A DNA stretch of 64,000 bases from Octopus sinensis (lineage: Eukaryota). The notes beneath the pieces are model-generated. The model saw nothing but the letters and a program-made list of their open reading frames with translations, was not told the origin of the DNA and ran no database searches. Positions 1,408 through 52,643 of this stretch are shown piece by piece. The number at the start of each line of letters is the position of its first letter. The stretch's first letter is position 1. The DNA is taken from positions 42,098,001-42,162,000 of the forward strand of contig NC_043000.1 of assembly GCF_006345805.1 (NCBI RefSeq), given 5' to 3'. Position numbers and translations under genes: made by a program.

Positions 1408-2325
1408 TATGAGGTAGTATAAAAAGGTTCATGGACAAGGAATGGTTCATAAAAAATATCTTATTTACCCAAGTTTAACATCATCTCCTTCGAAATAGTC
1501 ACTTTGCGCAGCAATACACCAGTTACAGTGTTTCTGCCATTTTTGGAACCTGACTTGGAAGTTGATTTCTGTAAGTGAGTCAAGGACCTTCTGCGATTCA
1601 CTCTGGATCTTGATAATGATGTTAAAACGGTAATGTTTTAACTGCATTTTCCTCTTGGGAAAGAGATGCAAGTTTGCAGGTGCTAAATCTGATGAATAGA
1701 GTGGGTGCAGAAGTGATAACAAGTTGTTTTTGGTGAGAAACACACGAATGAGGAGAACCTGGTGAGAGGGTACATTGTGGTCATGAAAACTCCAATTCTT
1801 CACAGACATTAGGATTGTCTGCATGGACCCATCCGACAGACCAACCACATCAATGATGCCATTGATTGTCCTCCGACAATCCTCATGCCCAACCAGATGA
1901 ATTTTCTCCTCACTTCCAGGGGTGACGTTCATGGCAAGTCTTCTAGATTGCTCATCATCATCCAGGAATGTTCTTCCGCTTTTGAAGCACCCATGCCACT
2001 CAAAACATTGCATACAACTCATTGTCTCATAGCTACAAGCTTGCTGAAGCATGCTCAATGACTCTGTAGCTGACTTCCTCAGTTTAATGTGAAATTTCAC
2101 ATTTGGTTTCGTTCCAAATTCCTGTCCATGACAAAAACATCACAGACGACAGCATGCATGTTATTTACAGAAACACAAATTTCACAACTTGCGAAGTAAA
2201 CTCAGTGATGTCACTTGGCACACTGCCTCATGAAGGTCACTGCTAGCTCTCACTGCACACGTAACTATGTACTGTCATCTGCCTGTGCACTACAGAACTA
2301 GTCCAGGAGCTTTTTGATACCCATT
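1408..2325 (-). mobile_element. Internally deleted mariner transposon with degenerate TIRs and a 211-codon transposase remnant ORF (1465..2100)
   Basis: N-terminal KF..KL.KSATE....LQQA...CFEWH..FKSGR and C-terminal degenerate HDNAPxH, HPxYSPDLAP and YFEGD; similar ends near 1408-1440 and 2298-2322. Confidence 0.85.
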
Positions 2326-14981: not shown

Positions 14982-16117
14982 CTCGTATTGTAATTTAATT
15001 CTCGTTATGTATTTTCTTGTACATGTATCTTTAATTTTGTATTATTTTTTTCTTATATGTATTTTTTTGTGCAGTTCTTTTTACGTCCCTTTTTGTGTTA
15101 CATTTTTTCTTGCTCGTTTTACCCCTCTACGTGGTTATTTTATTTTAATTCTCTCGTAGGAAGGCCTAGCATGACCATACGTGTTCTGTCTCTGCCTTCG
15201 AAACACGTGTCTGCTAGCGACAGCTGATGGAGGGGATTTTTCCTTGTGCAGCATGTCCTGTACTTCGTTTTTCTGCTGCACATAATTGTTTTTCCCGTTT
15301 TCGTTTTCGTTTCGTCTTGTTCCACGTCTCTGTCCTTCTGTTGTAACAAAATGGCTTTTCCGTTTTCGTTCTGTTGATTTTTACGTCTTCTTCTGATGTC
15401 CTGTACGTATATATATATTTATATATGCATGTATATATACATGTAGATGTTGGTACGTACATATATGTTTGTATGTTTGCATATATTTTATTTATTACAC
15501 TATATATATATATATATATATATACTAGCAGCTAAACCTGGTTTTACCTGATCGGTTTGGATGATGTGGCTATAAAACCTGCTCTGTGTAAGCATTCAAC
15601 TTGTTTGGGTACGTTTACATTAAAAAAAAATTTTAGAATGGCTTTTTGTGTCAAAACACTAAAAATAACTGACCAACAAAATAAAAAGACCAACCAAATT
15701 TCAACCAAATCAAAAAATAAACCCAAATATTAAGCAAACAAAAATAAACCATTCCACTTCCATTGCGAGGACACACACACATACCTCCCTATTACATACA
15801 CACACATATATTCACAGAGAGCTGAAACGCTGTTTGATTTAATTTTTTCAGAGTACAATTTTCATCAGCCCCCTACCAAGTATGACATCACCCTTTCCTT
15901 CCTTATTCATTTATCACCCCTTCTTTTCTCATTCATAAATACAAGAGTATTATTATAGTAGATTATCTCAGTAGCCATGGGAGCTATGCATAAATTACAA
16001 AGCTCAGCATCATCACCGGATCATTCTACACACCTGTGTAATTTTTCATGCAATTCTACCCAGCCGTTTGACTGTGAATCCCAAGACAAGAAAGAATTGC
16101 CCATGTCAAATTGTATG

Positions 16118-16181
<64 letters not shown>

Positions 16182-16194
16182 ATATATATATATA

Positions 16195-16990
16195 TAAGGT
16201 TAATCCAAACAAGAAAACAGAAAAGACAACACAAAGAGGTGGAACAATTAAAGTATTATTATTAGGCACTCAGGAAAAAAGGGAAGAAGGAGGGTATGAC
16301 GTTTCGAGCGGAGCTCTTCATCGGAAACATAAGAGAAAGAAAGATCCCGAGGTGGGAGGACAGAGGGAAAAAAAACGCGACTGGTCTTCACGAGGTAAAC
16401 ATACTGAAAGGCAGGAAGTCGTAGACGAGAGGGGACAGGTTTTCAAGACAGGAGAGCGGAAAAAGAAGGTAGGTAAAAACACAATGAGTGGGAAGAAGAG
16501 GGTGTGTATGTGAGTATGTACGTGTGTGTGTGTGTATGTGTGTGTAAGGCGACAGCTAGTGGCGAGCAGCAGTCGTAACGGTGTGCGAGATAAAAAATGT
16601 GTGTGTCTGTGTTTATATGTGTGTACGTATGTGTATGTGTGCGTGCGCGTGGAGGTATATGTTGGGTGTGTGTATGTGCCGGTGTGCATGTGAATTTGTG
16701 TGTGTTTGTACGTGTGTAAGTGTATTGTATATATATATATGCAAATGTGTGTGTGTGAGTGTGTGGGAGTGAGTGTATGTATGTGTGTGCGTGTGTGTAC
16801 AAAAAGTAGGGGTATTATATGTGTGTGTATATATATGCATGCAAGGAAACAAACTGCAACTGACGGAAAGATGGAAAAATGCTCCCGCGGTGACAGGCGT
16901 AAGAGAAACCCAAGAACACGCTGGCCCCAGATACGAACCCGAGATCTAGTCAGAACCCACGGGCGTGGTGCATGCATGTATGTATGCGTG
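16195..16990 (-). mobile_element. Young Penelope-like terminal-repeat region interleaved with (CA)n
   Basis: 16195-16380 is homologous, in inverted orientation, to 60780-60970. Both carry a hammerhead-like motif and both are CpG-rich. Confidence 0.6.
16294..16328 (-). ncRNA. Minimal hammerhead-like motif, CCGAUGA (U4C) core
   Basis: GUUU-CCGAUGA-A-GAGC(UCC)GCUC-GAAAC-GUC-AUAC. Confidence 0.5.
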
Positions 16991-17765
16991 CGCGAGCGCG
17001 CACATGCATGTATGTGCGGGCGCATGCGAGTGTGTGTGTAAGTATGTGTGTGTGTGTGGATGTGTGAGTGTGTATGTGTGTGTGTATGTGTGTGAGTGTG
17101 TGTGTATGTATGTGTGGAAGTGTGTGTATGTGCATGTGTGTGCGCATGCATGCGAGTGTGTGAGTAAGTGTGTGTGTGTGTATGTATGTGTGAGTGTGTA
17201 TGTGTGTATGTCTGTGTGTATATGTGTCCGTATGAGTGTATGTAAGTATGGGTGTGTGTATGCGTGTATGTGTATGGGTGTATGTATGTATGTATGTGTG
17301 TGTGTATGTGTGTATGTGTGGAAGTGTGTGTGTGTATGCATGTATGTATGTGTGTGTGTATGTATGTATGTGTACGTGAGTGTGTGTGTGTATGCATGTA
17401 TGCGTACATGCGTGTAGGTGTGTGCGTGTGCATGCATGCATGCATGTGCGTATGTATGTGTGTGTGTGTGTGCATGTGTGTAAGTATATATGTATGTGCG
17501 TATATGTGTGTGTATGTGCGTATATGTGTGTGTGTATGTATGTGTGTGTGTGTGAGTGTGTGTATGTGTGTGTGTGTATGTGTGTGTGTGTGTATGTATG
17601 TATGGGTGTGTGTCTGTGTATGTTTGTGTGTGTGTGTGTATGTATGTATGTATGCATGTATGTATGGGTGAGGGTATGTGTGTATGTAAGTGTGTGTGTA
17701 CGTATATATATATATATATTTGAGTGTGTGTATGTGTGTGTGTATGAATGTATGCATGCATGTGT
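16500..17765. repeat. Long compound (TG)n/(TATG)n microsatellite
   Basis: Directly visible; it is the source of the H/T/I and C/V/M pseudo-ORFs. Confidence 0.95.
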
Positions 17766-18067
17766 GTAGGTGTAGCTGTGTGGTAAGAAGCTTTCTTCCC
17801 AACCATATGGTTCTGGGCTCAGTCCCACTGTGTGGTACCTTGGGCAAGTGTCTTCTACTATAGCCTTGAGCTGACCAATTAAAAGAAGTCCAATGTATAG
17901 ATATGGAATTTCCTTGATAACATACAACTACAACAGACAACAACCACAACAGCAGCACAGCCGAAGTGACAGCAAAGCCAAAGAAGCAACAGCAACAGAA
18001 TTAAAATTTAAATGCAGTATGGCTCTGATGGTTTATGGACTGAGAATTCTGTGTAATATGTGCTTAC

Positions 18068-18268
18068 TTTAAAAAGACAAGAAGAAGGTAATGTTGGTTG
18101 TAAATCTGTTTGACACGTTCTGCTGAGTTCGATGATAGAGTTGGGATTAGTATCACTCCAGGTAAAATTTTCCCAGTGAGATATTTTAGCATGTGGTAAA
18201 TGGTCTTTGATTCTTTCTTAACAGAATGTGCTTTTGGTGATTTCCTCTCTTCCAAGGTACCTATAGCA
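18068..18268 (-). CDS. CFAP47: CFAP47 exon (201 nt, phase 2-2): AIGTLEERK...KTIYHMLKYLTGKILPG...QHYLLLVFL
   Basis: Contains most of ORF 18064..18255; acceptor gtttttctcacag and donor TTAAA|gtaagc. Confidence 0.9.
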
Positions 18269-18325
18269 CTGTGAGAAAAACAATAATAAGAACAACAAAA
18301 TAATAATAATGATGATGATAATAAT

Positions 18326-18379
<54 letters not shown>

Positions 18380-18380
<1 letters not shown>

Positions 18381-18470
18381 TCATGCCTCCTCATTGATAT
18401 GATTGTCCCAAGCGATATAAACGTATCTGTCAAGACCTACCAAAAACTGAGCAAATATAAAGATCTGGAG
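18380..18470 (+). mobile_element. R4/Dong-like LINE restriction-like endonuclease fragment next to (TAA)n
   Basis: SCLLIDMIVPSDINVSVKTYQKLSKYKDLE, directly after a (TAA)n tract; Dong elements are known to target TAA repeats. Confidence 0.65.
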
Positions 18471-18589
18471 TTCAGGTCCAAACCAGACCCTGGGCAGTTT
18501 AACTGGTTTGTTGGTCCAGCATCCCATGATGTTACATGATGGCAAAGACCTTCCACTCCAGGTGCCAAGCTGCATGTCCACTAATTTTT

Positions 18590-19185
18590 TTTACATTGAT
18601 CTTAGCCCCTGTCATCAACTCATACTTCTTTACAAAGTTACTGATTGTCTCTACTTCAGTGGCATCTGACTCTATGGCGATGACATCATTCATATACACC
18701 ACACAGTACCCCTAGTCTACTTTGAAAGGGATGCTTCTCAACTGTTCTAGCTTCCACAGTAGTGGCTAAAGAGCCAATTTATACAGGAGAGATGAGAACA
18801 GGAGCCTTGTCAGACTGAGGCAAAATGGTTCTGAGAGGTGGTCATTAACTTTGACTATTGAGTAGGTGCTGTTGTGAATTGTAGTAATCCTACCCCTGAA
18901 AATGTGTCCAAACATGGTTGATTTCTGAATGGATTCTAAGTAACAATGACTGACCTTCTCAAAAAACTTTGACAGATCCAAACTGAATAGGGCTCCACTA
19001 ATGCCGGCACTGTTCCCTCCCCTCACTTTGATGTATCACATAAGGTGGAGGTTGTTGTGGATGGATCTGCTTGGATCACCCATGTTAACACTTCTCTGAC
19101 TACATCACCAATGACAAGTATCAACTTATTTGCCAAAATCTTGGTCCAAATCATAAACTGTAATTAGTAGTCATGGGTTGAAAAT
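18590..19185 (-). mobile_element. L1/Tx1-clade LINE reverse transcriptase fragment, decayed
   Basis: GALFSLDLSKFFEKVSHCYL...FG..FRG.I....S.VKVN.HLSEPF...SSLLY.LAL, a degenerate RT domain. Confidence 0.75.
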
Positions 19186-20131
19186 TGTAGACGGAGTCCT
19201 TTTTCAGCAGAGTTACCACTCCCTGGCTCACTCTGTTAGGAATTTTCCTGTCCTGGTGCAAGTTACAGTAGACATTAGCCAAGTGGTCGCCAAACAAATC
19301 CAACATGAACTTGCAGAATTTTTAGGGCAGACCATCCATACTGGGAGATTTATGCTTCAATTGTCATCATCATCATCATCATTATCATCAGCATGCATTA
19401 TCTGCTCTCAGTGGGTTAAATACCATAGCTTGTCACTTTGCTTTTTCTTGTGTTGTCTTGAATGTATTCACTGTATTTTCAGTCTGTTCAATTCTTGACT
19501 ATTATCCATCCACTAAATTCTTGCTTTCTTTCTGCCTCTTTTCTCATTAATTTTGACTTCTATTAACAGTCTCTTTAAAGCCATATGTTCCAGCAATGAT
19601 CAGTACATCTTCTCCAACTACCAGACAAAATGAATGACTTATAATCCAATATATCTTTATCTGTTATTCCGTAAAGATTTGAGCGAGGTCATTGCCAGTG
19701 CTGCTGGACTGGCTCCTGTGCAGATGGCACGTAAAAAACACCATTTGAGCGTGGCTGTTGCCAGTACTGCCAGACTGGTCCTCGTGCTGGTGGCACATAA
19801 AAGCATCCACTACACTCTCGGAGTGGTTGGCATTAGGAAGGGCATCCAGCTGTAGAAACTCTGCCAGGTCAGATTGGGGCCCGGTGCAGCCATCTGGTTC
19901 GCCAGTCCTCAGTTAAATCATCCATCCTCATGCTAGCATGGAAAGCGGACGTTAAACAATGATGATTATGATGATGATAAATAAAGTATGGTTTTGAGAA
20001 AATTTAGCTGCTATGTTTAGCAGGTTGAACAATTTCGTTGAGTGTACCTTGTCTTTCATTGTTTTCTTTAATTGCTTTACAAACAACAGCTTAAACGAAG
20101 TATCTGTTGAACTGACTTTGTTTTAACTTAC

Positions 20132-20366
20132 CTTCGGAAAGAGTGAGGGACTGTGATTGAAACTGTTCCTCCAGGCCAGCCATTTGCTGAAAACCATCTC
20201 TGTACAGCATACAGAACTGAATAATGGAAAGGACCGATTTGTTTATCATGTTCAGGAAAAATGTTACTTCCAATTTTGCCAAGTTCTTGCAACTTGCTCA
20301 ATACAGTTTCCTCTGATGGTGTAGATGTCCATTCACCATCGTAAATTCCATTGCTATATTTTTGGA
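20132..20366 (-). CDS. CFAP47: CFAP47 exon (235 nt, phase 1-2): QKYSNGIY...YAVQRWFSANGWPGGTVSITVPHSFR
   Basis: Part of ORF 20128..20427; poly-T acceptor ...cattcctcag and donor CGAAG|gtaagt. Confidence 0.92.
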
Positions 20367-20499
20367 CTGAGGAATGAGTAACAATAAAAAAAAAAAAGAA
20401 AGGAAACAGATAAATACATTCAATCAATGGAAAATCTAATTAACTTTTAATAAGCTACTAGGTCTTTATCTGTCACAATGCTGCCAGTAAAAATATCTA

Positions 20500-21066
20500 T
20501 TGGGTTGTCCGGAAAGTTTGTGCTGATTTTTGAAGGAAAGAAAAAGGTCAATAGATACTTGCCATTACATCCTTTAATCAACCAAATATGAACCATTTTG
20601 TTGCACAATGCATCTTCATTTTTCCTTTAACTTGAAAATACCCTCTTCCCAGAAATGAAGTGCTTACATGGCAAAGAATTCATCAAGGTATCTTTTTATG
20701 TCATCCAAGGAATTGAAATTTTTACCATTAAGACTATTCTGCAGAGACCTGAATAAGTGGAAATTTGAAGGAGCAATATCTGGTGAATGTGGAGGATGGG
20801 ATAACACATCCCAGCCAAACTGCAGCAATTTTTGTCTGGTTCCCAAAGCATTAAGTGCCGAAAATGAACTTTTTAATCTTCCATTTTAAAGTGTTACAAA
20901 ATTAAAACAGGTTGTAGGAACATAAACCTTCTTCCACGAAAAGATAGCTTAAACTGTGCTCTAAATGGAGGTGTAGTCAAATCCTATTTTATGGACTCAA
21001 CCATGTTCTAAAATAAGTCGAAAGGTAAGCTACTATAAATCGGCATGGACTTTCCAGACAACCCAA
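20500..21066 (-). mobile_element. Mariner deletion derivative (MITE-like) with intact TIRs and TA target duplications
   Basis: TA|TTGGGTTGTCCGGAAAGT ... ACTTTCCAGACAACCCAA|TA; ORF 20664..20846 WDVLSHPPHSPDIAPSNFHLFRSLQNSL. Confidence 0.9.
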
Positions 21067-23655: not shown

Positions 23656-23657
23656 AA

Positions 23658-24341
23658 AGGTAAATTGACTATATAATAAACAGAGAGTGAGAAATATCTA
23701 TCAGACGTTAATATCTTACTATATAATATCAGCTAGTACTCCCCTGAGCTAAATACATAGTTTAACATGTGCTTGCTTTTTAATGATCAATATTACATAT
23801 TACAGTCTGTAATATATACTGGTGTCAACGTAATCAACTAAACCTCTTGAAGGGAGTGCTCCAGCATGGCCTCAGTTATATGTCCGAGGCTAGCAATAAT
23901 AATAAAATAATAAAGAAATACTACTTACAGGAATATTGATCATATGGATCTGATTCAAAGGAACATATTGAGCTTTCTTCTATGACTGAAGGTAAATTGA
24001 CAATATGATAAACAGAGAGTGAGAAATATCTATCAGACGGTAATATCTTACTGTGTAATATCAGCTAGTACTCCCCTGAGCTAAATACATAGTTTAACAT
24101 GTGCTTGCTTTTCAATGATCAATATTACTTATTACTGTCTGATATGTAATATCAGTCTGTAATATATACTGGTGTCAATGTAATCAACTAAACCTCTTGA
24201 AGGGAGTGCTCCAGCATGGCCTCAGTTATATGTCCGAGGCTAGCAATAATAATAAAATAATAAAGAAATACTACTTACAGGAATATTGATCATATGGATC
24301 TGATTCAAAAGAATATATTGAGCTTTCTTCTATGACTGAAG
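23658..24341. repeat. Direct tandem duplication (units ~332 and ~350 bp) including the 3' end and donor of a CFAP47 exon
   Basis: 23659-23990 versus 23991-24340 are near-identical; the second copy has an extra internal piece of ~18 bp. Confidence 0.93.
23929..23985 (-). CDS. Candidate novel cassette exon (57 nt, phase 1-1): IEESSICSFESDPYDQYS, a duplicated 3' part of the 24279-24462 exon
   Basis: Duplicated donor TCCT|gtaagt plus a new acceptor tcactctctgtttatcatattgtcaatttaccttcag formed at the duplication junction; in frame with no stop. Use in vivo is unknown. Confidence 0.4.
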
Positions 24342-24462
24342 TCACCACACTGGAACTATTCTCACTGATTGAATTCAATGAGGAGTCACAGGGCACACAA
24401 ATGGCCTCTCCAGCATCAACACTTTCATTTGAACTGCTCTTCGGTCCTTTGAGTGATGTACC
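24279..24462 (-). CDS. CFAP47: CFAP47 exon (184 nt, phase 0-1): GTSLKGPKSSSNESVDAG...SFESDPYDQYS (Ser-rich linker)
   Basis: Part of ORF 24271..24501; acceptor aattcttttctgccag and donor TCCT|gtaagt. Confidence 0.87.
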
Positions 24463-24589: not shown

Positions 24590-25090
24590 TATCATCATCA
24601 TCATCATCATCATCATTTAGCGTCCGCTTTCCATGCTAGCATGGGTTGGACGGTTTAACTGGGGTCTGTGAAGCCGGAAGGCTTCATCAGGCCCAGTCAG
24701 ATTTGGCAGTGTTTCTACGGCTGGATGCCCTTCCTAACGCCAACCACTCCGCGAGTGTAGTGGGTGTTTTTTACGTGCCACCTGCACAGGTGCCAGACAG
24801 AGCTGGCGAACGGCCACGAACGGACGATGCTTTTACGTGTCACCTGCACGGGGGCCAGCCGAGGCTGGCTACGAACACGAACGTATGGTGCTTTTACGTG
24901 CCACCGACACGGGGCCAGACAGAGCTGGCAAACGGCCACGAACGGACGGTGCTTTTACGTGTCACCTGCACGGGGGCCAGCCGAGGCTGGCAACGAACAC
25001 GAACGGATGGTGCTTTTACGTGCCACTGACACGGGGCCAGACAGAGCTGGCAAACGGCCACGAACGGACGGTGCTTTTACATGTCAATAT
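24590..25090 (-). mobile_element. Young RTE-LINE 3' tail (family C) with internal 5 x 61-bp A-B-A-B-A repeat
   Basis: (GAT)n tail and conserved GGAGTGGTTGGCGTTAGGAAGGGCATCCAGC core; units start at 24769, 24831, 24892, 24953, 25014 and 25075. Confidence 0.85.
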
Positions 25091-28274: not shown

Positions 28275-28665
28275 ATATATATATATATACATGATGGAGT
28301 GGCTGTGTGGTAAGTAGCTTGCTTACCAGCCACATGGTTCTGGGTTCAGTCCCACACTGCGTGGCACCTAGTTGATCAAAGCCCTGTGAGTGGATTTGGT
28401 TGACGGAAACTGAAAGAAGCTCTTTGTATATATGTATATGTATGTATATGTGTGCATGCTTGTGTGTCTGTGCTTGTCTCCCCAACATTGCTTGACAACC
28501 GATGCTGGTGTGTTTATGTCTCTGTGACTTAGTGGTTTGGCAAAAGATACCGATAGAATAAGTACTAGGCTTACAAAGAATAAGTCCTGGGGTCGATTTG
28601 CTCAACTAAAGGTGGTGCTCCAGCATGGCCGCAGTCAAATGACTGAAACAAGTAAAAGAGTAAAG
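28275..28665 (+). mobile_element. tRNA-derived SINE, family B, with central (TA)n/(TG)n (also 49085-49518 -, 51705-52155 +, 52180-52510 -, 61000-61385 -)
   Basis: Head GTGGCTGTGTGGTAAG...GGGTTCAGTCCCAC and tail CAGCATGGCCGCAGTCAAATGACTGAAACAAGTAAAAGAGT, repeated in many copies. Confidence 0.85.
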
Positions 28666-29787: not shown

Positions 29788-32347
29788 CATCGTCGTCGTC
29801 GTCGCCGCCGCCACCACCACCACCACCACCACCATCACCATCACCATCATCATCATTATCATCATCTGACATCTCTTTATCCATGTTGGCATGAGTTGGA
29901 TGACAGCATCTTGCCTCTTGCTGCAGTCTTTCATCTACTTATACACCCACTTGCAAAAGATACTGACAATTGTTGTAGTGATTGTGTAATTCTTCTGCTT
30001 CAGGTATTTTATGGCTGGTGACCTTTCCTACTGTCAACCATGTTACAGCATGAACTAGGTACATTTTATCCATCTACTAGCATAGGTACTCTCTACCTAG
30101 ACCAGTTTTACAGATCTTCTAAATAGGTTAATTTCACTACGTGTAGCAAGGTCTATATCTCATATGCTCCTTCTTTTCAGGTATCAAAAATAATTCTTTC
30201 TTTTCTGATGCATACCTATTCTATCACCAACAACTTTACAATGTACACAAGGTGAATGTTTATTATACCATTAATATTATCTTTGTCATGTATATATAGA
30301 GAAGAAGCATATATCATTAATTTGTGGTGGCTGGGAGTAAGGCTCACTCCATGATGCATGTAGAGGAAAGGCATTTAGATCCCTAGGAAACATACCGTAA
30401 TGGTCCAATAACAACAGAGCCTATTGTGAAGACCTAAAGGTGGGTAAAGATCAATGGCATGGCTAAGAGGGTGGATATATTAGTCATTGTCACATATCAC
30501 CAGTCATACTTCTAAAGTATGAGTGGTAATGTAATACCCAATTCCAGGGTAGGCTTATGATTCATCAGTCCAGGAGTTCCTTTCTGTTTGTTTTTTTAGG
30601 CAAAGCCATCATCCATCACCAGCTCACCAGGCCTGTCACAACTTCATGTCTATTTGCTGTTTTAGACAAGGCCATCATCCATTGCCAGCTTGCCAGGCCT
30701 GTCATAAATTTATCATTTTACACATTTTTGTTAGCTGAGTAGACTAGTGCAATGTGAAATATTTTGCTCAAGAACACAACACATCACCTGGTACTGGAAT
30801 TGAAACCACAATCTTACAATCATGAGTTCAACACCCTAACTACTAAACCATATGCCTCCACGACTGGAAATGTAAATGATAAAACTAAAGCTAGTTATTT
30901 CTTATCTTGCTTGAGTCTACTTGGTTTATATCCTTCATATGTGTATGTACAGCAAACATTTCCTAAAAGTATTGGTGCCACAGGTGAATTCAAGTGAAGT
31001 AAATGTGTATTAACCAAACCCTGAAATAAGTGTTGCTGTCTTGACTCACAAAAGATTTTATCATTAAGGTGTTCACCACAGTGTGGCATTATAAGATAGA
31101 TATCACTAAAGAGTGGTGAAGCTGGCTGAGAAAGTAGGACATTGGTAAAAAGTTAATATAGTATTTAGAGTTCATATCCTACAACAGATGGTATTTTTTT
31201 TCACTTCTTATAAATTACGCAGTATCAATATTATCATTATTGATAATACATAAAAGACAGTAATTTGGCAGAATTGTTAGCACACCAGGGAGAAAGCTTA
31301 ATGGAATTTTGCCCATCCTCATCTTCTGAGTTCAAATTTTGCTGAGGTTGACTTCACCTTTCATCCTTTTGAGCTTGATAAAATAGGTAACAGTTGGTTA
31401 CTGGGATTGATGTAATCGATTAACCCCTCCCCCAGGACTGCTGGTCCTGTGCCAAAATTTTAAACCAATAATACATATAAGGTGGTGGGCTACCAGAAAC
31501 ATCAGCACCCTGTTCTGAGTTCAAATTTCACTGAGGTCAATTTTGCCTTACATCCTTTTGGGGGTAATTGAAATAAGTACTAATTGAGAACTGGGGTTAA
31601 CACAATCAATTAACTTCTCAGCCAGGATTGCTGCCCGGTGCCAAAATTTGAAACCAGTAACACAAATAAGGTGGTGAGCTAGCAGAAGTCATTAGCACAC
31701 TCTTCTGAGTTCAAATTCCACTAAAGTTGATTTTTACCTTACATCATTTGGGGATGGGGTGGGGTCTGTGAAATAAGTACTAGTTGAGTATTGGAGGTGG
31801 TCAATGTAATGGACTATCTCCCTCACACCAAATGTCCGACCTTGTGCCTATAGTAGAAAGGATTATTAACAATACATATACAAGTAATATTGTAGGCCTG
31901 ATTAAGGTAGCAGTTATATCCTACCCTTGCTCACCATGGTTATATATAACTGTTACATCCTGTTGCCCCTACTTTTTCGAACCTGATTAAGATAACAGAT
32001 GCACCCTGCCAACTCCAACCTAAGGTAAGAGTTACACACTGTCATACCTACACACCCTTCAAAATTATTGATCTTGTAACTACTATAAACATAGCAATAA
32101 ATTTAGAGATCAAACCTGTATGATAACAATGGTGTTCACGATGATGGTGATGATGGCCATGGTGGTGACGGTGTTGATGGTGATGATAATGATGATGATG
32201 ATAATGATGATGATGATGATGATGATAATGAATGCTGATAAGATTTCGATGATAGCGTTGTCAGTAGTTGTGGTGGGAATGATAGTGATATTGATGATAG
32301 TGATGATGATGATGATAATGATGATGATGATGATTATGATGATGATT

Positions 32348-32386
<39 letters not shown>

Positions 32387-33743
32387 ATGATGATGATAAG
32401 GAGCAATGGAAAGGTCAGATCGTGCTAATCAATTAGTTGTGTCTAATTGGTTACAGAATCAGAATGTTACAAGTAGATGATGCCAAAAAGTACTCATCAT
32501 ATTGATCCACCTAATGCCGCTACTGCTGCCAACAACGGCAACAACAACAACAGCAATGGCACATTTTTACCATCACCTCCTCTCTGTCTCTTTTCCAAGT
32601 GGGGTAGTCAGGTATCTCCTCCAAACCATTTTCTGTCCCTCTATTAAACTTTAATCTCTCACCACCTGGCACAACACCATCTCTCTCAATATAAATCCTT
32701 CCCTCAGTCGAGGTGGGGTGGAGTGCCTTGCCTTGCAAATTACTTTTTGGCCTCTCCGGTGCTGGTGCCACATAAAAAGACACTCAGCATACTCTGTAAA
32801 ATGGTTGAGTATTAAGAAGGACATTCATAGAAGCAGAGAGTGGACCCTGATGCAATCCTATGGTTTACCAGCTCCTATTGAACTGTCCAAACCATGCCAG
32901 CTAGGAAAAACGGAGGTTAAATGATGGTGATAATGATGATGATGATGATGATGATGATGAACGTCATCTTATTTTCCCATCTGGTAGACTAGATTAGCAT
33001 ATTCCACCTTCCATTGTCTCTTATCAATAATGGTCACACAATAGGAGACAAAAAAAATTAATTAATAGCTGCAGGCATGGCTATTTGGTAAGAAGCTTGA
33101 TTCCAAACCACATGGTTAAGGGTTCAGTTCCACAGCATGACATCTAGAGTGAGTGTCTTCTACTATAGCCTTCAGCTAATCAAAGCTTTGTGAGTGGATT
33201 TGGTAGATGGAAACTGAAAGAAGACTGTCATATATATATATATCATCATCATCATCATCATCGTTTAACGTCCGTTTTCCGCGCTAGCACGGGTTGGACG
33301 GTTTCGACCGGGGTCTGGGGAGCTCGGGACTGCCCCAGGCTCCAGTCTAGTCTGGCAGTGTTTCTACAGCTGGATGCCCTTCCTAACGCCAACCACTCCG
33401 CGAGTGTAGTGGGTGTTTTTTTACGTGCCACCTGCACAGGTGCCAGAGGGGTCTGGCATCGGCCACGTTCGGATGGTGCTTTTTATGTGGGGGGGGGTAT
33501 AGAAATATATAGGGGAGCACCAGTGGGGAGGGGTGGTTCAGAGAAATGATGACGGGTTCTAGGCAAGTAGAACGTAGGATATCAAGAGAGGGGTAATGCA
33601 TGGTGAAATAGCGTGTTGAAGAGGGGGGTTCGAAGAGTAGACACCTATAATGGTGGTGGGAGAAGCGACATCCGGTATAGATGGAACAAAAATATAGAGA
33701 TATCCGGTATTGGTGGTGGGGGTGGGCAACGGCGGGTGCACCG

Positions 33744-35556
33744 GGAATATGCGAAGGTTGAACTTTAGAGAAACGGGCGGGAATGGCGATGTTTTTAGGG
33801 TGGCATGTAGAAAGAAAAGGAAAGCAAAGCAGATTGGTGGTTATAAGTTCAAAACATTTAACGGTAGAACAAATGTATGTAGGTATGAAAAAGAAGGGAG
33901 AAATCTTAGCCTGCTCATGGACATCGCTGCAAGTCAGGGGAAGAAATGATAGTGAATGGTGGAGATCGAATTAAAGGAATATGCGAAGGTTGAACTTTAG
34001 AGAAACGGGCGGGAATGGTGATGTTTTTAGGGTGGCATGTAGAAAGAAAAGGAAAGCAAAGCAGATTGGTGGTTATAAGTTCAAAACATTTAAACGGTAG
34101 ACAAATGTATGTAGGTATGAAAAAGAAGGGAGAAATCTTAGCCTGCTCATGGACATCGCTGCAAGTCAGGGGAAGAAATGATAGTGAATGGTGGAGATCG
34201 AATTAAAGGGAATATGCGAAGGTTGAACTTTAGAGAAACGGGCGGGAATGGCGATGTTTTTAGGGTGGCATGTAGAAAGAAAAGGAAAGCAAAGCAGATT
34301 GGTGGTTATAAGTTCAAAACATTTAAACGGTAGACAAATGTATGTAGGTATGAAAAAGAAGGGAGAAATCTTAGCCTGCTCATGGACATCGCTGCAAGTC
34401 AGGGGAAGAAATGATAGTGAATGGTGGAGATCGAATTAAGGGAATATGCGAAGGTTGAACTTTTAGAAACGGGCGGGAATGGCGATGTTTTTTAGGGTGG
34501 CATGTAGAAAGAAAAGGAAAGCAAAGCAGATTGGTGGTTATAAGTTCAAAACATTTAAACGGTAGACAAATGTATGTATGTATGAAAAAGAAGGGAGAAA
34601 TCTTAGCCTGCTCATGGACATCGCTGCAAGTCAGGGGAAGAAATGATAGTGAATGGTGGAGATCGAATTAAAGGGAATATGCGAAGGTTGAACTTTAGAG
34701 AAACGGGTGGGATGGCGATGTTTTTAGGGTGGCATGTAGAAAGAAAAGGAAAGCAAAGCAGATTGGTGGTTATAAGTTCAAAACATTTAAACGGTAGACA
34801 AATGTATGTATGTATGAAAAAGAAGGGAGAAATCTTAGCCTGCTCATGGACATCGCTGCAAGTCAGGGGAAGAATGATAGTGAATGGTGGAGATCGAATT
34901 AAAGGGAATATGCGAAGGTTGAACTTTAGAGAAACGGGCGGGAATGGCGATGTTTTTAGGGTGGCATGTAGAAAGAAAAGGAAAGCAAAGCAGATTGGTG
35001 GTTATAAGTTCAAAACATTTAAACGGTAGACAAATGTATGTATGTATGAAAAAGAAGGGAGAAATCTTAGCCTGCTCATGGACATCGCTGCAAGTCAGGG
35101 GAAGAAATGATAGTGAATGGTGGAGATCGAATTAAAGGGAATATGCAAAGGTTGAACTTTAGAGAAACGGGCGGGAATGGCGATGTTTTTAGGGTGGCAT
35201 GTAGAAAGAAAAGGAAAGCAAAGCAGATTGGTGGTTATAAGTTCAAAACATTTAAACGGTAGACAAATGTATGTATGTATGAAATAGAAGGGAGAAATCT
35301 TAGCCTGCTCATGGACATCGCTGCAAGTCAGGGGAAGAAATGATAGTGAATGGTGGAGATCGAATTAAAGGGAATATGCGAAGGTTGAACTTTAGAGAAA
35401 CGGGCGGGAATGGCGATGTTTTTAGGGTGGCATGTAGAAAGAAAAGGAAAGCAAAGCAGATTGGTGGTTATAAGTTCAAAACATTTAAACGGTAGACAAA
35501 TGTATGTAGGTATGAAATAGAAGAGAGAAATCTTAGCCTGCTCATGGACATCGCTG
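33744..35556. repeat. Tandem array of 7.8 near-identical 231-233-bp units
   Basis: Units start at 33744, 33976, 34209, 34441, 34674, 34905, 35138 and 35371; the last is truncated at 35556. Confidence 0.97.
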
Positions 35557-37559
35557 TGTGTGTGTGTGTGTGTTTTGTCTTTGTGGTTGTTCCCAATATC
35601 ACTTGACAGCTAGTGTTGGTGCGTCTAATCATTGTAACTTAGCAATTTGGCAAAAGAGACTGATAGAAAAAGTACCAGGCTTAACAAAAAGTAAGTAGTG
35701 AAGTCAATTCATTCAACTAAAAATGGAATTCTCCAAAGTGATGCCCCAGCATGGCCACAGTCTAATGAGCGAAACAAGTAAACAATAAAAAATAAAAGAG
35801 AAATGACACTGAAGACGATAACAACTGTAGCCAAAAGCATAAAACAACAACAACAAAAATGACAACAAACAACTCCATCCCCACCCCCACCCCCACCACA
35901 ACCACTATCACAACAAAAAGAAACCAAAAACCATGAAAGCAACAACAACAACAAGAACAACCAGTGACAACAGCAACAACTTCTGCAACAACATGAGCAA
36001 AAGTACAAAGCAACAAAAACCAGCAACAAATGTATCTAAAAAAAAAAAAAGCAACACAAAAATAATACATTAATGACAGCAACAAAGAGGTAAACAATTA
36101 GGTCATTATTAATGTGTGAAAGTGGGAGACGAAATTTATCATGGTGCTTCATAATATTAAAATTTTGATTTCATATTCAGTAAATTAGATGAAAATTAAT
36201 GGAAATAGCCATGTTTTTTTTTTTTATTTTTTAATTATTTTTACCAAGAAAAAAATCTATAAAGCTGGATGATGGCAAGATTGTGATGGATTAATTGTAT
36301 GTGTTTGTACATAAGCGCACACATCTATCTTACTGCTTATCTACTACCCTGTTAACTCACCTGTATAACAACAACAATAATGATTTCAAATTTTTTGGCA
36401 TAAGGCCAGCAATTTTGGAAAAAGGAAAAGTAGGTTACATCAACCTCAAGGTTCATCATCATTATCATCACTTAATGTCCGCTTTCCATACTGGCATGAG
36501 TTGAATGGTTTGACTAAGGACTGGCAAGCCAGAAAGCTGCACCAGGCTCCAATCTGATCTGGCAAAGTTTATACAGCTCGATGCCCTTCCTAATGTCAAC
36601 TGCTCTGAGAGTGTAGTGGGTGCTTTTTACATGCCACTGGCACGAGGGTCAGTCAGGTGGTACTGGCATTGACCATGCTCAAATGGTGCTTTTTATGTGC
36701 AACTAGCATGGCACCAGTCAGGTGTCACTGGCATTGACCATGTTTGTATGGTGCATTTTATGTGCCACTGGCATGGAAGTCAGTCAGGCAGTACTGGCAT
36801 CAGCCACAATAATGATTTCACTTGACTCAACAGGCCTTTTGAAGCACAGTTTATTGCTCAATGATTAAAGTGTACTCTTAAATGGCCCAGTTCATCTGGT
36901 ACTTATTTTATTGAACCTGAAGGTGATGATGATTTATATAAAAGCAAAGTTGACCTTGGTGGAATTTGAACTCAGTATGTAAAGACTGATGAAATGCTGC
37001 TAAGCATTTCACCCAGCATGCTAGCAATTCTTCTAGCTTCCTACGTTAGTAATAATAATAAAAATAATAATAACAATAATAATCCTTTCTATTAAAGGCA
37101 CAAGGGTTGAAATTTGTGGGGTAGGGGCAAAGTTGGTTACATCAACTCCAGTGTCTCACTGGTACGTAATTTATTGATAAAGGCGGTGAGCTGGCAGAAA
37201 CATTAGCATGCCGGGCGATATGCTAAGCGATATTTCGTCTGCTGTTATGTTCTGAGTTCAAATTCCGCCGAGGTCGACTTTGCCTTTCATCCTTTTGGGG
37301 TCGATAAATTAAGTACCAGTTACGCACTGGGATCGATGTAATCGACTTAATACCTATGTCTGTCCTTGTTTGTCCCCTCTATGTTTAGCCCCTTGTGGGT
37401 AATAAAGAAATAGGTACTTAATTTATTGACCCCAAAAGGATGAAAAGCAAAGTTGATTTTGTCGATATTTGAACTCAGAACATAGTGACAGGTGAAATGC
37501 CGCTAAGCATTTCGTCCAGCATGCTAATAATAATAATAATAATGATAATAATAATGATA

Positions 37560-38187: not shown

Positions 38188-39582
38188 CTGGAGACGTTAA
38201 AAAAAAAATCAAAAATGAATAAAAGACAAAAGCATGAAAATGAAAACAAAAAATACAAGATTACAAATCATTTAATGATAACCAGAATGAAATTCCTGAG
38301 CCTCTGTTCATGTTTTGACAGCCAGGTTCAATATCCAGTGCCCTTATTGCAGCAACTATTTCATTTCTGCATCACGGTGATGGTGGTGGTGATGATGGTG
38401 GTGACAAAGACTAGGACATTGGTGATGGAAATGATAATAAAAGGCACCAGTGCTGGTGCCGCATAAAAAGCACCTCAGCTGGTGCTACATAAAATGCACC
38501 CTGTACACTCTGTAAAGTGGTTGATTTTAAGAAGGGTATTTAACCATAGCAACAATGCTAAGAGAAACAATAGGCACCTGGGTATCTCTCCAGCTGGCCA
38601 GCTCCTTTTAAACTGTCTGACCCATGCCAGCATGGAAAATGGGCATTAAGTGAGGATGTGTGCTGATGGCATTAAAAAGCACCATCCGAACTTGGCTGAT
38701 GCTGGTGCCCTCTGACTGGCTCCTGTACCAGTGGTATGTAAAAAGCACTATCTGAACGTGAACGATGCCAGGGCCACCCGACTGGCACCTGTGCCAGTGG
38801 TATGTAAAAAGCCCCTACTACACTCTCGGAGTGGTTGGCATTAGGAAGGGCATCCAGCTGTAGAAACCTTGTTAGATCAGATTAGAGCCTGGTGCAGCCT
38901 TCTGGCTTGCCAGTACTCAGTCAAACTATCAAACCCATGCCAGCACGGAAAACAATGTTAAACAATGCTGATGATGCTGATGATGATGATAATAACAATG
39001 GCAAAACATATTTTCATCAAACTTTTCACCTCTACATGAAAAGGATGAGGATAATGATGATAAGAAAATGGTGGTGGGAATGATGATGATGGTGATGATA
39101 CTGTTGCTGATGATGATAATAACACTGACGATGATGATGATTTATATAAAGTTGGTGAGAATGAGTATGAGAATAATGATGATGATGCTGATGCAGGAAG
39201 AGGAAGTAAAGCAAAACAAAAAGAAAAAAAGAATTGATAGATTAAAAAAAAAAATATGAAATCCTAAAAGAGAACATTAAAGCAATATTTTTTTTGCTGC
39301 TTTTTAAACTATCGCAGATTAAAAGCTTTTTGCATCAGTAGCATCACCACCTTCAACACCATAAAAAAGAAAAAAAACAAAAAATTTTACTAACAATACC
39401 AACACCACCACCACCACCACACCACCGTCAACAACAACAACAGCACTGACATTCAATGACATTTTGTTTTGAAATAATATAGACAACAAAAATTATTACT
39501 TCAATAATTACTGCATTTTGAATTTGTTGTTTTAATTGTTAATGTGTCTGTTATTAGATATGTCATTTATAATTTCATAATC

Positions 39583-46133: not shown

Positions 46134-46329
46134 GTAAAATAGTCAACTGGCTGCATAAGAACATCGACAGAGTCTTCAATTTGCAATGGAACTCTGAAAT
46201 ACACTGCAGATGGGTTGAACACAATCCAGGAAAGCCTCACAAAAACACTGATCTGAAGATATTTGTGAATTGTTTTGTAGTTTTCATTGAGGTAAATTGG
46301 AATCTGGAAGCTATAGTTGGTGCAGGTTT
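46134..46329 (-). CDS. CFAP47: CFAP47 exon (196 nt, phase 1-2): TCTNYSFQIPIYLNEN...FNPSAVYFRVPLQIEDSVDVLMQPVDYF
   Basis: Part of ORF 46130..46504; donor TTTAC|gtgagt. The acceptor gctgtgcacag was chosen because it is the nearby AG that gives phase 1; other AGs exist at 46304 and 46311. Confidence 0.8.
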
Positions 46330-47560: not shown

Positions 47561-49838
47561 TTCTGATTAAGGTGACATTTATCTAAACAATTGGTGTTGG
47601 ACCTGACAGAGGCAAAGTCACTGAGCTCTTTTTGAGTGTTGCACCTCACGGAGGTAAAGTGGCTGAGTTCCTTTTGAGTGTTGGGTGTCATGGAGGCAAT
47701 GACCAAGACATTTAGCATTGTTATGCTTGAGAAGAAGACCCATGAAGATGAGCAAAATTGCAGTCTTGGCAGATACCGGTGTCACGCAAATTGGCACCCA
47801 TACCAGTGGCATGTAGACACACCCCGGTGTCACACAAATGATACCTGTGCTAGCGGCCTGTAAAAGCACCCATTACACTCTTGGAGTGGTTGGCGTTAGG
47901 AAGAGCATCAAGTCATACAAAACCATGCCAAATCAGACTAGAGTCTGGTGCAGCCTTCCAATCAAACTGTTCAACCTATGCTAGCATGGACAATGAACGT
48001 TAAATGATGATGAAGCATTGACTGAAAAATGATGAGCTAACTCCAGCTACAAATTGAACCAACAAATCAACACTAACATGGCTCCTTGCACATGTGCTTG
48101 AAAAACAGTATGCAAAAGGACGATAATGATTATATATGTCAAGGAAGTGTCATTATGACAATATTGCTAACACATATTTCATGACTCTCTCTAGACACAA
48201 CAAAATTTGTTTCAATATACGAATTCACAAAAAGAATCTTACAAACCAAATACAAAACAAAGTGTGTGTGTGTGTGTGCATATGAATGTATGTATATCAA
48301 TATCACCATCATAAGGTCCACTTTTCCTTGCTTGTGTGGGTTGGACAGAAATTACTAAGGCAAATCTATTCTCAGGTGCCCTTCCTGTTACCAGCCCTCA
48401 CTTGTTTCCAAGTCAGATAATATTTCCCCACGGTCAAGCATATTTTCAAAATATTGGAAATGAATGACATTGCTTGTATGACTGTGACGCTCATTTACTA
48501 CAATCATATGATATCAAGATACAGTGACACAAAATAAATACACTCACACACAATACACACATACATGTTTATGCGTGCGTAAGTGCATCTATGTAAGTAT
48601 GTATGTATGTATCTATCTATCAATCTATCTATTTATATATATCTATCTGTCTATCTATACACACACACACACACACACACACCACACACAAACAGCTGTA
48701 GTCATAACTGTTTAGTTAAGAACTTCACAACCCAACTATATTGTTTTGGGTTCATTTTCATTTCTACTCTTCAATACCTTAGGCAAGTGTCTTCTATTGA
48801 GGCATTACCCTTCAAATGTAATCACCATGTGTGGGGTGTAATTCAGAAAGACACCAACTATCAGCAATAACAGGGCTGAACTTGTAGACAAGATCAAGGA
48901 GGTGTTTGAAGAACTTCCCAGGGATACAGTGAGGAATGCATACAATATGTTCCAAAGCCATCTTAAGGTTGTGGTGGAACAACAGCCAGGATTGAAATAC
49001 TTTACGTTCATATGCCTGTTAGGTGAAGCTTTAAACTGGCACTCTGTTGGTTATGACAACAAGGGTTCTCTTTGATCATGGAATTAATGTGCAAGTGGTT
49101 GAGTACTCCACAGACATACTCTTTTACTCTTTTACTTGTTTCAGTCATTTGACTGCGGCCATGCTGGAGCACCGCCTTTAGTCGAGCAAATCGACCGCGG
49201 GACTTATTCCTTGTAAGCCCAGTACTTATTCTATCGGTCTCTTTTGCCGATCCGCTAAGTGACGGGGACATAAACACACCAGCATCGGTTGTCAAGCAAT
49301 GCTAGGGGTCAAACACAAACACACACACACACATATATATATATACATATATACGACAGGCTTCTTTCAGTTTTCGTCTACCAAATTCACTCACAAGGCA
49401 TTGGTTGACCCGGGCCTATAGCAGAAGACACTTGCCCAAGATGCCACGCAGTGGGACTGAACCCGGAACCATGTGGTTGGTTAGCAAGCTACTTACCACA
49501 CAGCCACTCCTGCGCCTATGTATACCTTTAATGTAGTTCTCGGTGAGGTTCAGCGTGACACAGGATGTGACAAGGCCAGCTGTGTGAATTACAGGTGGAA
49601 CGTGAAATGAAGTGTCTTGCTCAAGGACATAATGTGCCACTAGTAATCGAACTTACGACCTTCGATTGAGAGCCAAATACCTTAACCACTAAGCCATGCA
49701 CCTTCACAGGTGAAGCTTTAACCAAGGCTAAATAACAATGGCAATCTTAGCTGCAGCAATGTTAATGACAATGAAAATAACAACTAGTGTAATAAAAGCA
49801 ACAATATTCTTCAAAACAATAGTAGAGCTCAAACTCAC

Positions 49839-50043
49839 TTGGAGAGCAAATCACTGATATAACTTCTTTTGAATGTGGTCGAAGATGGTGCCCAATAAAT
49901 CCTTCTTTTGTTAACTCCAGCCCTTCACCTTCTTTATTTACAAACTTGAGAACATCTCTATTGTTGTATGTTTCTAGAATATTCAGGTCAAGATCATATC
50001 GCAGGTTGTGGTTGGTTTTATTTTCGACAACAATCTCTTGAGA
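49839..50043 (-). CDS. CFAP47: CFAP47 exon (205 nt, phase 0-1): SQEIVVENKTNHNLRYDLDL...VISVICSP
   Basis: Acceptor tttatttcttgctttttag and donor CCAA|gtgagt; open frame. Confidence 0.88.
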
Positions 50044-51923: not shown

Positions 51924-52643
51924 GTATGTGTGTGTATATGTTTGTGTGTCTGTGTTTGTCCCCCCAACATCGTTTGACAACCGATGCTGGTGTGTTTACG
52001 TCCCCGTCACTTAGTGGTTCGGCAAAAGAGACCAATAGAATAAGTACTGGGCTTACAAAGAATAAGTCCTGGGATCGATTTCCTCAACTAAAGGTGGTGC
52101 TCCAGCATGGCCGCAGTCAAATGACTGAAACAAGTAAAAGAGTAAAAGAGTAAGAGAATGAATCAACATTAGTACTTTCTATTTTTAAAACCTGGTACTT
52201 ATTCTATTGATTGCTCTGCCAAACCAATAAGTTATGGGGATGTAAGCACACCAACACTGGTTGTCAAGTGGTGGTGGTGATGGTGATGGGGGACAAACAC
52301 AAACACAAACACAAACACACACAGACACAAAGTCACACACACACGAAGACACACACACACAAGACACACAGACACAAAGTCACGCACATGCATATATATA
52401 TATATAACACATGATGAGCTTCTTTCAGCTTCTGTCTACCAAATCCACTCACAATGCTTTGGTCAGCCCTAGGCTATCGTAGAATACACTTGCCCAAGGT
52501 GCTATGTGGTTGAGAAGAAAACCTCTTATCATACAGGAGTGCTTGCACTTATACGAAAAAAAAAAAAAACTCCCAGAAAAACAAAGAAAAATGAAAACAC
52601 AATTATAATAATAAAAGAAGTAACTATCAATAAAAAGAACTAC

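What the first reader, a model, noticed from the sequence alone, without database searches (positions are those of the whole stretch)
23658..24341. Exon birth by partial tandem duplication: a ready-made in-frame 57-nt cassette exon
Seen: the duplication copies the last ~62 nt of exon 24279-24462 with its GTAAGT donor. At the junction, copied intronic pyrimidine-rich sequence abuts an exonic AG and forms a good acceptor (tcactctctgtttatcatattgtcaatttaccttcag). The resulting segment 23985-23929 is 57 nt, phase 1-1 and stop-free. Inclusion would give ...YDQYS-F-IEESSICSFESDPYDQYS-F-QKYSN..., a 19-residue repeat in the Ser/acidic linker, with one Y-to-C change. Inference: a snapshot of a new alternatively spliced exon arising with both splice sites and frame intact.
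Basis: partly seen in the sequence, partly recalled or inferred. Interest (0 to 1): 0.75.

Follow-up and report, generated by a model that had tools for sequence, protein, structure and literature searches.

The report
Duplicated exon tail in octopus CFAP47
A 350-base tandem duplication across one exon-intron boundary of an octopus sperm-tail gene (CFAP47) left a second, in-frame 57-base copy of the exon's end in the intron; it could be spliced in, and one public gene model includes it, but no transcript data could be reached and this route to new exons is already known.

Summary
On the minus strand, exon 24462-24279 loses nothing, but its last ~60-63 nt, the GTAAGT donor and ~290 nt of intron are repeated head to tail: copy A is 24341-23992 and copy B is 23991-23660. 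The copies differ by 10 substitutions (3.0%) and one 18-nt indel.

The junction creates ...tcaatttaccttcag|TC. The segment 23985-23929 is 57 nt, stop-free and phase 1-1.

The gene is CFAP47 of an Octopus vulgaris-group genome. It matches PDB CFAP47 at E=1.4e-21, and the 100%-identical public protein is CAI9721780.1.

New here: that O. vulgaris model already contains the cassette (...YDQYSFIEESSICSFESDPYDQYSFQKYS...). It comes from a genome that differs from the window at two residues, so the duplication is real and shared. A ~50%-identical cephalopod-like mRNA has a single copy.

Three cautions apply:
- The public model is unreliable nearby. It skips two conserved exons and truncates a third.
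- The new acceptor is weaker than 13 of 15 authentic acceptors of this gene.
- The exon-derived part has diverged as fast as the intronic part.

Whether the cassette is used remains untested. It is a neat but ordinary case of a known mechanism.

The parts
24279..24462 (-). Parent exon (ex1) of CFAP47, 184 nt, phase 0 to 1. It encodes a Ser/acidic linker: GTSLKGPKSSSNES...SDPYDQYS.
   Evidence: Splice sites and frame. It is 100% present in P0001. Its first 28 aa are 57% identical to the Logan mRNA protein P0013. It is part of a 13-exon stop-free model.
23992..24341 (-). Duplication copy A, 350 nt: the last 60-63 nt of ex1, donor A (GTAAGT at 24278-24273) and ~287 nt of intron.
   Evidence: the repeat finder D2/D3; pairwise alignment; BLAST E=3e-150.
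23660..23991 (-). Duplication copy B, 332 nt, lying wholly inside the intron as defined by donor A. It is followed by CTT (23659-23657), the breakpoint microhomology.
   Evidence: There are 10 substitutions and one 18-nt indel relative to copy A.
23986..24030 (-). New 3' splice region formed at the A/B junction. It has YUNAY branch-point candidates at -35 (ctcAc) and -24 (tttAt), no AG between -45 and the site, an interrupted pyrimidine tract (tcaatttaccttc) and AG at 23987-23986. The AG and the 4 nt before it are exon-derived.
   Evidence: Read from the sequence. PWM score 2.0-2.8 bits, lower than 12-13 of 15 authentic acceptors.
23929..23985 (-). Candidate cassette exon, 57 nt, phase 1 to 1, stop-free. 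It encodes (F)IEESSICSFESDPYDQYS(F) and contains the purine-rich GAAGAA motif.
   Evidence: The peptide is present in the public O. vulgaris protein CAI9721780.1.
23923..23928 (-). Donor B (GTAAGT). It is identical to donor A over the 9-mer and for more than 100 nt downstream.
   Evidence: The donor PWM score is in the top 1.75% of all GTs on this strand.
24136..24153 (-). 18-nt segment (GATATTACATATCAGACA) present only in copy A and flanked by CAGAC direct repeats. It is a slippage deletion in B or an insertion in A.
24200..24267 (-). Old interspersed-repeat (SINE-like) fragment just downstream of the donor, carried along by the duplication. Its copy in B is at 23850-23917.
   Evidence: ~75% matches to 52091-52158, 49122-49178, 35742-35804, 28609-28641 and 2751-2793.
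20132..20366 (-). Next exon (ex2), 235 nt, phase 1 to 2. It carries the conserved motif QRWFSANGWPGG.
   Evidence: Matches residues 1499-1552 of PDB CFAP47 9ijj_4A. 52 library proteins match at E<=1e-3.

Best explanation
A replication-slippage or microhomology-mediated tandem duplication of ~350 bp hit the 3' end of one CFAP47 exon and the start of the following intron. This happened in an ancestor of the Octopus vulgaris group.

Donor A still precedes everything that was added. Splicing from donor A to the old downstream acceptor at 20367 therefore removes copy B together with the intron and gives the unchanged mRNA. That is why the mutation was tolerated.

Copy B is a latent exon. It keeps an authentic donor and exonic enhancer-like sequence. 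The junction placed an intronic branch point and a modest pyrimidine tract in front of an exonic AG, and the 57 nt between the sites keep the frame.

If the spliceosome defines it as an exon, the only effect is a 19-residue repeat in a Ser/acidic linker. That linker varies in length and sequence between species, so inclusion would be nearly neutral.

My estimate is that the cassette is skipped in most transcripts and included in a minority. The duplication, the signals and the frame are shown. The splicing outcome and the neutrality are inferred.
For: - Structure, frame and microhomology.
- Gene identity: PDB CFAP47 at E=1.4e-21 with colinear exons; Pfam CFAP47 and Ig_CFAP47 on the 100%-identical public protein.
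- Real and shared: the cassette peptide, including the Cys, is in CAI9721780.1 from GCA_951406725.2. The window differs from that protein at two internal residues.
- Age: 3.0% divergence between the copies.
- Single copy in an outgroup mRNA, P0013 from SRR27666078.
- Linker variability: the octopus, P0013, Lymnaea (P0028) and P0021 sequences align at the start of ex1 and in ex2, but are unalignable and of different length in between.
- Reading through donor A hits TAG after two codons, so only skipping or clean inclusion keeps the gene working.
- Weak acceptor. In addition, 49 other acceptor-donor pairs in the window have sites at least as strong and an open frame.
Against: - No RNA evidence either way was reachable.
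- The only gene model available includes the cassette, which would fit constitutive inclusion.
- The splice-site PWMs rest on only 15 sites and are noisy.
- The donor is strong and the exon carries GAAGAA, so exon definition could compensate for the weak acceptor and make inclusion the major form.
Confidence: 0.55

Rival explanations
1. Constitutive new exon: the cassette is spliced into essentially all CFAP47 mRNAs, as in the public O. vulgaris model. The species' normal protein then carries the 19-residue tandem repeat.
For: CAI9721780.1 contains the cassette, and no skip isoform sits in its 90% cluster. The annotation pipeline used Iso-Seq and RNA-seq as well as ab initio predictors. The donor is identical to an authentic one. 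The exon exceeds 50 nt and contains a purine-rich motif.
Against: The same model omits conserved, intact exons at 18268-18068 and 46329-46134. It also cuts exon 50043-49839 at an internal GTAAAT. This stretch is therefore unlikely to be supported by full-length transcripts. The acceptor is weaker than 13 of 15 authentic ones.
Confidence: 0.2
2. Silent intronic relic: copy B is never recognised, and its inclusion in the public model is a gene-finder artefact driven by inherited coding potential.
For: The acceptor is weak: 13.5% of all AGs score as high. Dozens of equally good pseudo-exons lie in the same window. The exon-derived part diverged at 2/62, the same rate as the intron at 8/270. The surrounding model is unreliable.
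Against: All core signals are present, and the donor is proven functional in copy A. With only 2 substitutions, absence of constraint cannot be distinguished from constraint.
Confidence: 0.2
3. Assembly artefact or private polymorphism: the tandem copy is a mis-assembly, or it is present in only one individual.
For: Nothing specific. Tandem repeats can in principle be mis-assembled.
Against: The copies differ at 10 positions plus an indel. The identical cassette peptide is encoded in an independent genome, GCA_951406725.2.
Confidence: 0.02
4. Adaptive repeat: the extra SFESDPYDQYS motif was selected because it adds a functional binding or phosphorylation module to the CFAP47 linker.
For: None beyond persistence of the open frame.
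Against: An open frame over 19 codons after 2 substitutions is expected by chance. One of the two changes is non-synonymous (Y>C). The linker is not conserved among molluscs.
Confidence: 0.03

Closest known systems
Tandem exon duplication giving alternative (cassette or mutually exclusive) exons (Kondrashov & Koonin 2001 and Letunic et al. 2002, from my own knowledge; example of duplicated U2AF1 exons in PMC5224494)
   Same: A tandem intragenic duplication supplies a second, homologous, frame-compatible coding segment with a ready-made donor.
   Different: Classical cases duplicate a whole exon with both of its splice sites. Here only the 3' third of an exon was copied, and the acceptor had to be created by the duplication junction. 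Usage of the new segment is unproven.
Intron gain by tandem genomic duplication (Rogers model; potato RdRp case in PMC4974935; Drosophila cases in PMC2891723, read)
   Same: A short tandem duplication (hundreds of bp, with microhomology) is rendered harmless because splice signals on either side of the junction let the extra copy be spliced out. It can leave alternative splice patterns when the size is a multiple of 3.
   Different: Those cases duplicate purely exonic sequence containing an AG|GY proto-splice site and create a new intron. Here the duplication spans an existing donor, so the default outcome needs no new site. If the new acceptor is used, the result is a new 293-nt intron plus a new exon.
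Pseudoexons and de novo exonization from intronic sequence (exon creation in human genes, PMC2592719; new mammalian exons, bioRxiv 10.1101/009282)
   Same: An intronic segment with a moderate acceptor and a good donor may be included at low level. Young exons are typically alternatively spliced and lineage-specific.
   Different: The candidate here did not arise from unique intronic or transposon sequence. It is a copy of coding sequence, so its frame and codon content are exon-like from the start.

Membership tests
Tandem segmental duplication spanning an exon-intron boundary | Two adjacent head-to-tail copies with no spacer, at high identity far above chance | tested here: met
   350 and 332 nt, 97% identity in aligned columns, E=3e-150, only two copies in the window.
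Tandem segmental duplication spanning an exon-intron boundary | The unit contains exon sequence, the donor and intron sequence. Short microhomology at the breakpoints is usual but not required. | tested here: met
   The unit starts 60-63 nt before the donor and ends ~287 nt into the intron. CTT lies at both breakpoints.
Tandem segmental duplication spanning an exon-intron boundary | Present in independent genomes, so not an assembly artefact | tested here: met
   The cassette peptide is in CAI9721780.1 (GCA_951406725.2). The window differs from that protein at 2 internal residues.
Cassette (alternatively spliced) exon | AG acceptor with branch point and pyrimidine tract, plus a GT donor | tested here: met
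   All signals are present. The donor equals an authentic one. The acceptor is weak to moderate at 2.0-2.8 bits against an authentic median of ~8.
Cassette (alternatively spliced) exon | Length a multiple of 3 and no stop in the phase imposed by the neighbouring exons | tested here: met
   57 nt, phase 1-1, open; ex1+cassette+ex2 is open.
Cassette (alternatively spliced) exon | Transcripts showing both inclusion and skipping | not testable with these tools
   No octopus RNA data were reachable. Protein searches returned nothing, and exact-ORF look-ups and a metagenome scan were negative. The only indirect evidence is one public model that includes the cassette.
CFAP47 (CHDC2) orthologue | Colinear sequence similarity to CFAP47, including the calponin-homology region | tested here: met
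   Match to PDB 9ijj_4A CFAP47 at E=1.4e-21. Ex2 aligns to residues 1499-1552, and exons 11129-10934 and 6291-6194 align to residues 1694-1794.
CFAP47 (CHDC2) orthologue | Pfam CFAP47 (PF24529) and Ig_CFAP47 (PF26579) domains | tested here: met
   These are on record for P0001, which is 100% identical over ex1, ex2 and the following exons, and for P0013. They were not scanned directly on the window's partial protein.
Intron gain by tandem duplication (Rogers model) | Duplication of exonic sequence carrying an AG|GT proto-splice site, so that the GT of copy 1 and the AG of copy 2 bound the new intron | tested here: not met
   The GT is the pre-existing donor and most of the unit is intron. The AG lies at the start of the unit, not next to the GT. 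The mechanism is related, but this is not a member of that class.

The most novel reading that the evidence does not exclude
The 57-nt segment is a genuinely young alternatively spliced exon specific to the Octopus vulgaris group. It would have been born in a single mutational step from a duplication across a donor site, with both ancestral (skip) and derived (+19 aa) CFAP47 isoforms expressed in testis. That would make it one of the cleaner natural examples in which the creating mutation, both splice sites and the frame can still be read directly from the genome.
Probability: 0.35. Interest if true: 0.45.

Novelty: new member of a known kind. Interest (0 to 1): 0.3.

Why it matters
If the cassette is used, it documents one-step exon birth from a junction-spanning duplication in a cephalopod. 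The mechanism is still legible: the breakpoint microhomology, the acceptor assembled from intronic and exonic halves, and the inherited donor. It also shows why such mutations are tolerated, because the default splice removes the extra copy.

In practice it flags a stretch of the public O. vulgaris CFAP47 model that needs transcript-based curation. It changes nothing fundamental, because exon and intron birth through tandem duplication is established.

Tried and rejected
- The search for homologous proteins with ex1+ex2 and with a 258-aa stretch including the cassette returned nothing. It did not even return P0001, which is in the collection. These negatives are therefore uninformative, and I did not spend the third search.
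- Exact look-ups of genomic ORFs overlapping ex1 found nothing (76 aa, 81 aa). They were meant to find contigs from other individuals.
- A metagenome scan for a 36-nt exon/donor string found nothing.
- Pfam on ex1+ex2 alone gave no family.
- DNA of the O. vulgaris locus was not available because the gene range of 236 kb is too long.
- I considered that the unit might be a transposable element carrying exon-like sequence. I rejected this because there are only two copies, and only a 68-nt inner piece resembles dispersed repeats.
- I rejected assembly artefact.
- I considered intron gain in the strict Rogers sense and did not file it there (see the membership test).

Full report
**1. What is in the sequence**

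On the minus strand the window carries an exon at 24462-24279. It is 184 nt, with acceptor ttctgccag|GG and donor CCT|gtaagtag.

The repeat finder reports two direct pairs that together form one tandem duplication. One pair is 23803-23991 with 24153-24341 (98%). The other is 23657-23816 with 23989-24148 (93%).

A pairwise alignment gives copy A at 24341-23992 (350 nt) and copy B at 23991-23660 (332 nt). There is no spacer between them. They differ by 10 substitutions (3.0%; 7 transitions, 3 transversions; K2P about 0.031). One 18-nt segment (24153-24136) is present only in A and is flanked by CAGAC repeats.

Self-BLAST gives E=3e-150 and finds no third copy. Only an inner 68-nt piece (24200-24267 and its twin) resembles dispersed repeats, at about 75%.

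Both breakpoints share CTT, so the exon-derived part is 60-63 nt. Such 3-nt microhomology is typical of slippage or microhomology-mediated tandem duplication; that attribution is inference.

**2. The candidate exon**

The junction reads ...ctcactctctgtttatcatattgtcaatttac|cttcag|TCATAGAAGAAAGC.

- The AG (23987-23986) and the four bases before it come from the exon. Everything upstream comes from the intron.
- YUNAY branch-point candidates lie at -35 and -24, and there is no AG between -45 and the site. This is read directly from the sequence.
- The segment 23985-23929 is 57 nt. It enters and leaves in phase 1 and reads (F)IEESSICSFESDPYDQYS(F). It differs from the parent by TAT>TGT (Tyr>Cys) and a silent TCT>TCC.
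- Both ex1+ex2 and ex1+cassette+ex2 are open.
- Reading through donor A into the intron meets TAG after two codons. Only skipping or clean inclusion therefore preserves the protein.

Because the copy is an exon tail, it is read in its native frame whenever its length is a multiple of three. That is a 1-in-3 coincidence, not a remarkable one.

**3. The gene**

- Exon 2 (20366-20132) has CFAP47 (PDB 9ijj chain 4A, 3184 aa) as its best PDB match, at residues 1499-1552.
- A concatenate of candidate exons matches the same chain at E=1.4e-21. Exons 11129-10934 and 6291-6194 fall on residues 1694-1794, the calponin-homology region.
- A full HMMER search of the representative library with the exon 2 peptide found 52 proteins.
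- The best hit, P0001, is 100% identical. It is CAI9721780.1 / UniRef100_A0AA36AT16 of Octopus, encoded on a 176.7-Mb chromosome of GCA_951406725.2. Its gene range is 236 kb, and it carries Pfam CFAP47 and Ig_CFAP47.
- I mapped 15 exons of this gene in the window. A 13-exon model from 52916 to 2858 is open in a single frame with no stop.

**4. New evidence bearing on the interpretation**

(a) P0001 contains the cassette. It reads ...VIEESSIYSFESDPYDQYSFIEESSICSFESDPYDQYSFQKYSNG....

(b) The window is not that assembly. It differs from P0001 at two residues inside exons, I/V in exon 57325-57225 and K/R in exon 41949-41861. The duplication, with the same Cys, is therefore present in at least two genomes. 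Together with the 3% divergence this excludes an assembly artefact and argues for an event that is old and common or fixed. If neutral rates are a few per 10^9 per year it is millions of years old; that dating is inference.

(c) P0013 is a 2709-aa protein from an 8.5-kb Logan RNA contig (SRR27666078), about 50% identical, with the CFAP47 Pfam domains. It has a homologue of ex1: its first 28 aa are 57% identical, and the length up to ex2 is about the same. It has no 19-residue repeat. The repeat is therefore derived.

(d) Across octopus, P0013, Lymnaea (P0028) and P0021, the region between the start of ex1 and the conserved part of ex2 is Ser-rich. It is unalignable and of variable length. A 19-residue insertion there should be tolerated; this is inference.

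**5. How much weight the public model deserves**

The O. vulgaris annotation is an EVidenceModeler consensus. It combines Iso-Seq and RNA-seq assemblies, protein alignments, octopus-trained Augustus and GeneMark-ES (PMC10700109).

Around the cassette the model is clearly imperfect:

- It omits exon 18268-18068. That exon has perfect splice sites and phase 2-2, and it is 72% identical to Argonauta hians GAB1597909.1.
- It omits exon 46329-46134.
- It ends exon 50043-49839 early, at an internal GTAAAT.

All three of these features are conserved in P0013. Full-length transcript support for this stretch is therefore unlikely. Inclusion of the cassette may simply reflect its inherited coding potential plus acceptable sites.

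**6. Strength of the signals**

Donor B is identical to the working donor A over the 9-mer and for more than 100 nt downstream. It ranks in the top 1.75% of all GTs on this strand.

The acceptor is the weak point. In a position weight matrix built from the 15 authentic acceptors of this gene, it scores 2.0 bits (2.8 in a first version with two misplaced sites). The leave-one-out scores of authentic sites range from -5.5 to 11.3 with a median of about 7.7. Only 2 of the 15 score lower than the cassette, and 13.5% of all 3388 AGs on the strand score as high.

Its longest uninterrupted pyrimidine run is 5 nt. Most authentic sites have 6-11 nt, though three have fewer.

In the same window, 49 other acceptor-donor pairs 40-250 nt apart have sites at least as strong and an open frame, and 19 of them have a length that is a multiple of three. 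Site strength alone does not predict use. The matrix is small and noisy.

Three things favour use: the cassette carries GAAGAA, which is a classical purine-rich enhancer motif (established knowledge); it exceeds 50 nt; and the upstream intron it would create is 293 nt.

**7. Constraint**

There are two substitutions in the 62 exon-derived nt and eight in the 270 intronic nt, which is the same rate. One is non-synonymous and one is synonymous. The numbers are too small to show or exclude selection.

**8. Most likely mechanism**

The duplication was tolerated because donor A still lies upstream of everything added. The default splice from donor A to the acceptor at 20367 removes copy B with the intron and restores the ancestral mRNA.

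Copy B is a latent exon. If it is defined, through U1 at donor B and U2AF at the junction acceptor, a 293-nt intron is removed and 19 residues are added to a variable linker.

I estimate that skipping is the major outcome with minority inclusion (confidence 0.55). The rivals are constitutive inclusion as in the public model (0.2), a relic that is never used (0.2), an artefact (0.02) and an adaptive repeat (0.03).

**9. Comparison with known cases**

Exon gain through tandem duplication is established, as is intron gain through tandem duplication (PMC4974935; PMC2891723, read).

This case differs from whole-exon duplication because only an exon tail was copied and the acceptor was assembled at the junction. 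It differs from the Rogers intron-gain model because an existing donor, not an exonic AG|GT proto-splice site, was duplicated.

It is a new member of a known kind.

**10. What could not be done**

No octopus transcript data or other octopus genomes were reachable. DNA of the O. vulgaris locus was withheld because the gene range is too long. The decisive test is junction counting in testis RNA.

Noticed in passing
window 18068-18268 (-): Intact, conserved CFAP47 exon of 201 nt, phase 2-2, acceptor tttttctcacag, donor AAA|gtaagc. It is 72% identical to Argonauta hians GAB1597909.1 and 49% to P0013. It is absent from the public O. vulgaris model CAI9721780.1, which joins ex2 directly to 13875.
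   Followed up: yes
window 46134-46329 (-) and 49839-50043 (-): A second conserved exon (46329-46134) is missing from the public model. That model also ends exon 50043-49839 early at an internal GTAAAT near 49941. With these exons restored, 13 exons from 52916 to 2858 read open without a stop.
   Followed up: yes
window 24769-25086: Tandem array with a 61-nt unit and a 122-nt higher-order period, about 5 copies, in the intron upstream of ex1. Its translation (…LQLDALPNANHSASVVG…) recurs in ORFs at about 33169-33546, 38675-38881 and 55737-56236, so it belongs to a dispersed SINE-like family.
   Followed up: partly
window ~33700-35500: Satellite-like array with a period of about 232 nt. The same 70-aa ORF recurs at 33762, 33994, 34227, 34459 and 34923 in a large CFAP47 intron, and this coincides with strong GC skew (0.28) for 32001-36000.
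   Followed up: no
window 16500-17800: More than 1 kb of TG/CA-rich low-complexity sequence (ORFs reading VCVCVCMYV…) in the intron between exons 18268 and 13875. GC skew is 0.23 for 16001-20000.
   Followed up: no
window 20667-20885 (-) and 1468-2139 (-): Mariner/Tc1-like transposase remnants, judged by eye from …HPPHSPDIAPSNFHLFRSLQN… and …HPLYSSDLAPANLHLFPKRK…. The first lies only about 300 nt upstream of the ex2 acceptor. Reverse-transcriptase-like ORFs lie at about 18535-19035 (-).
   Followed up: no
tool behaviour (against 22, 24): the search for homologous proteins returned no hit for queries that are 100% identical over more than 130 residues to P0001. The listing of cluster members shows that P0001 is in the same collection. 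Negatives from that tool are therefore not informative for this eukaryotic locus.
   Followed up: partly
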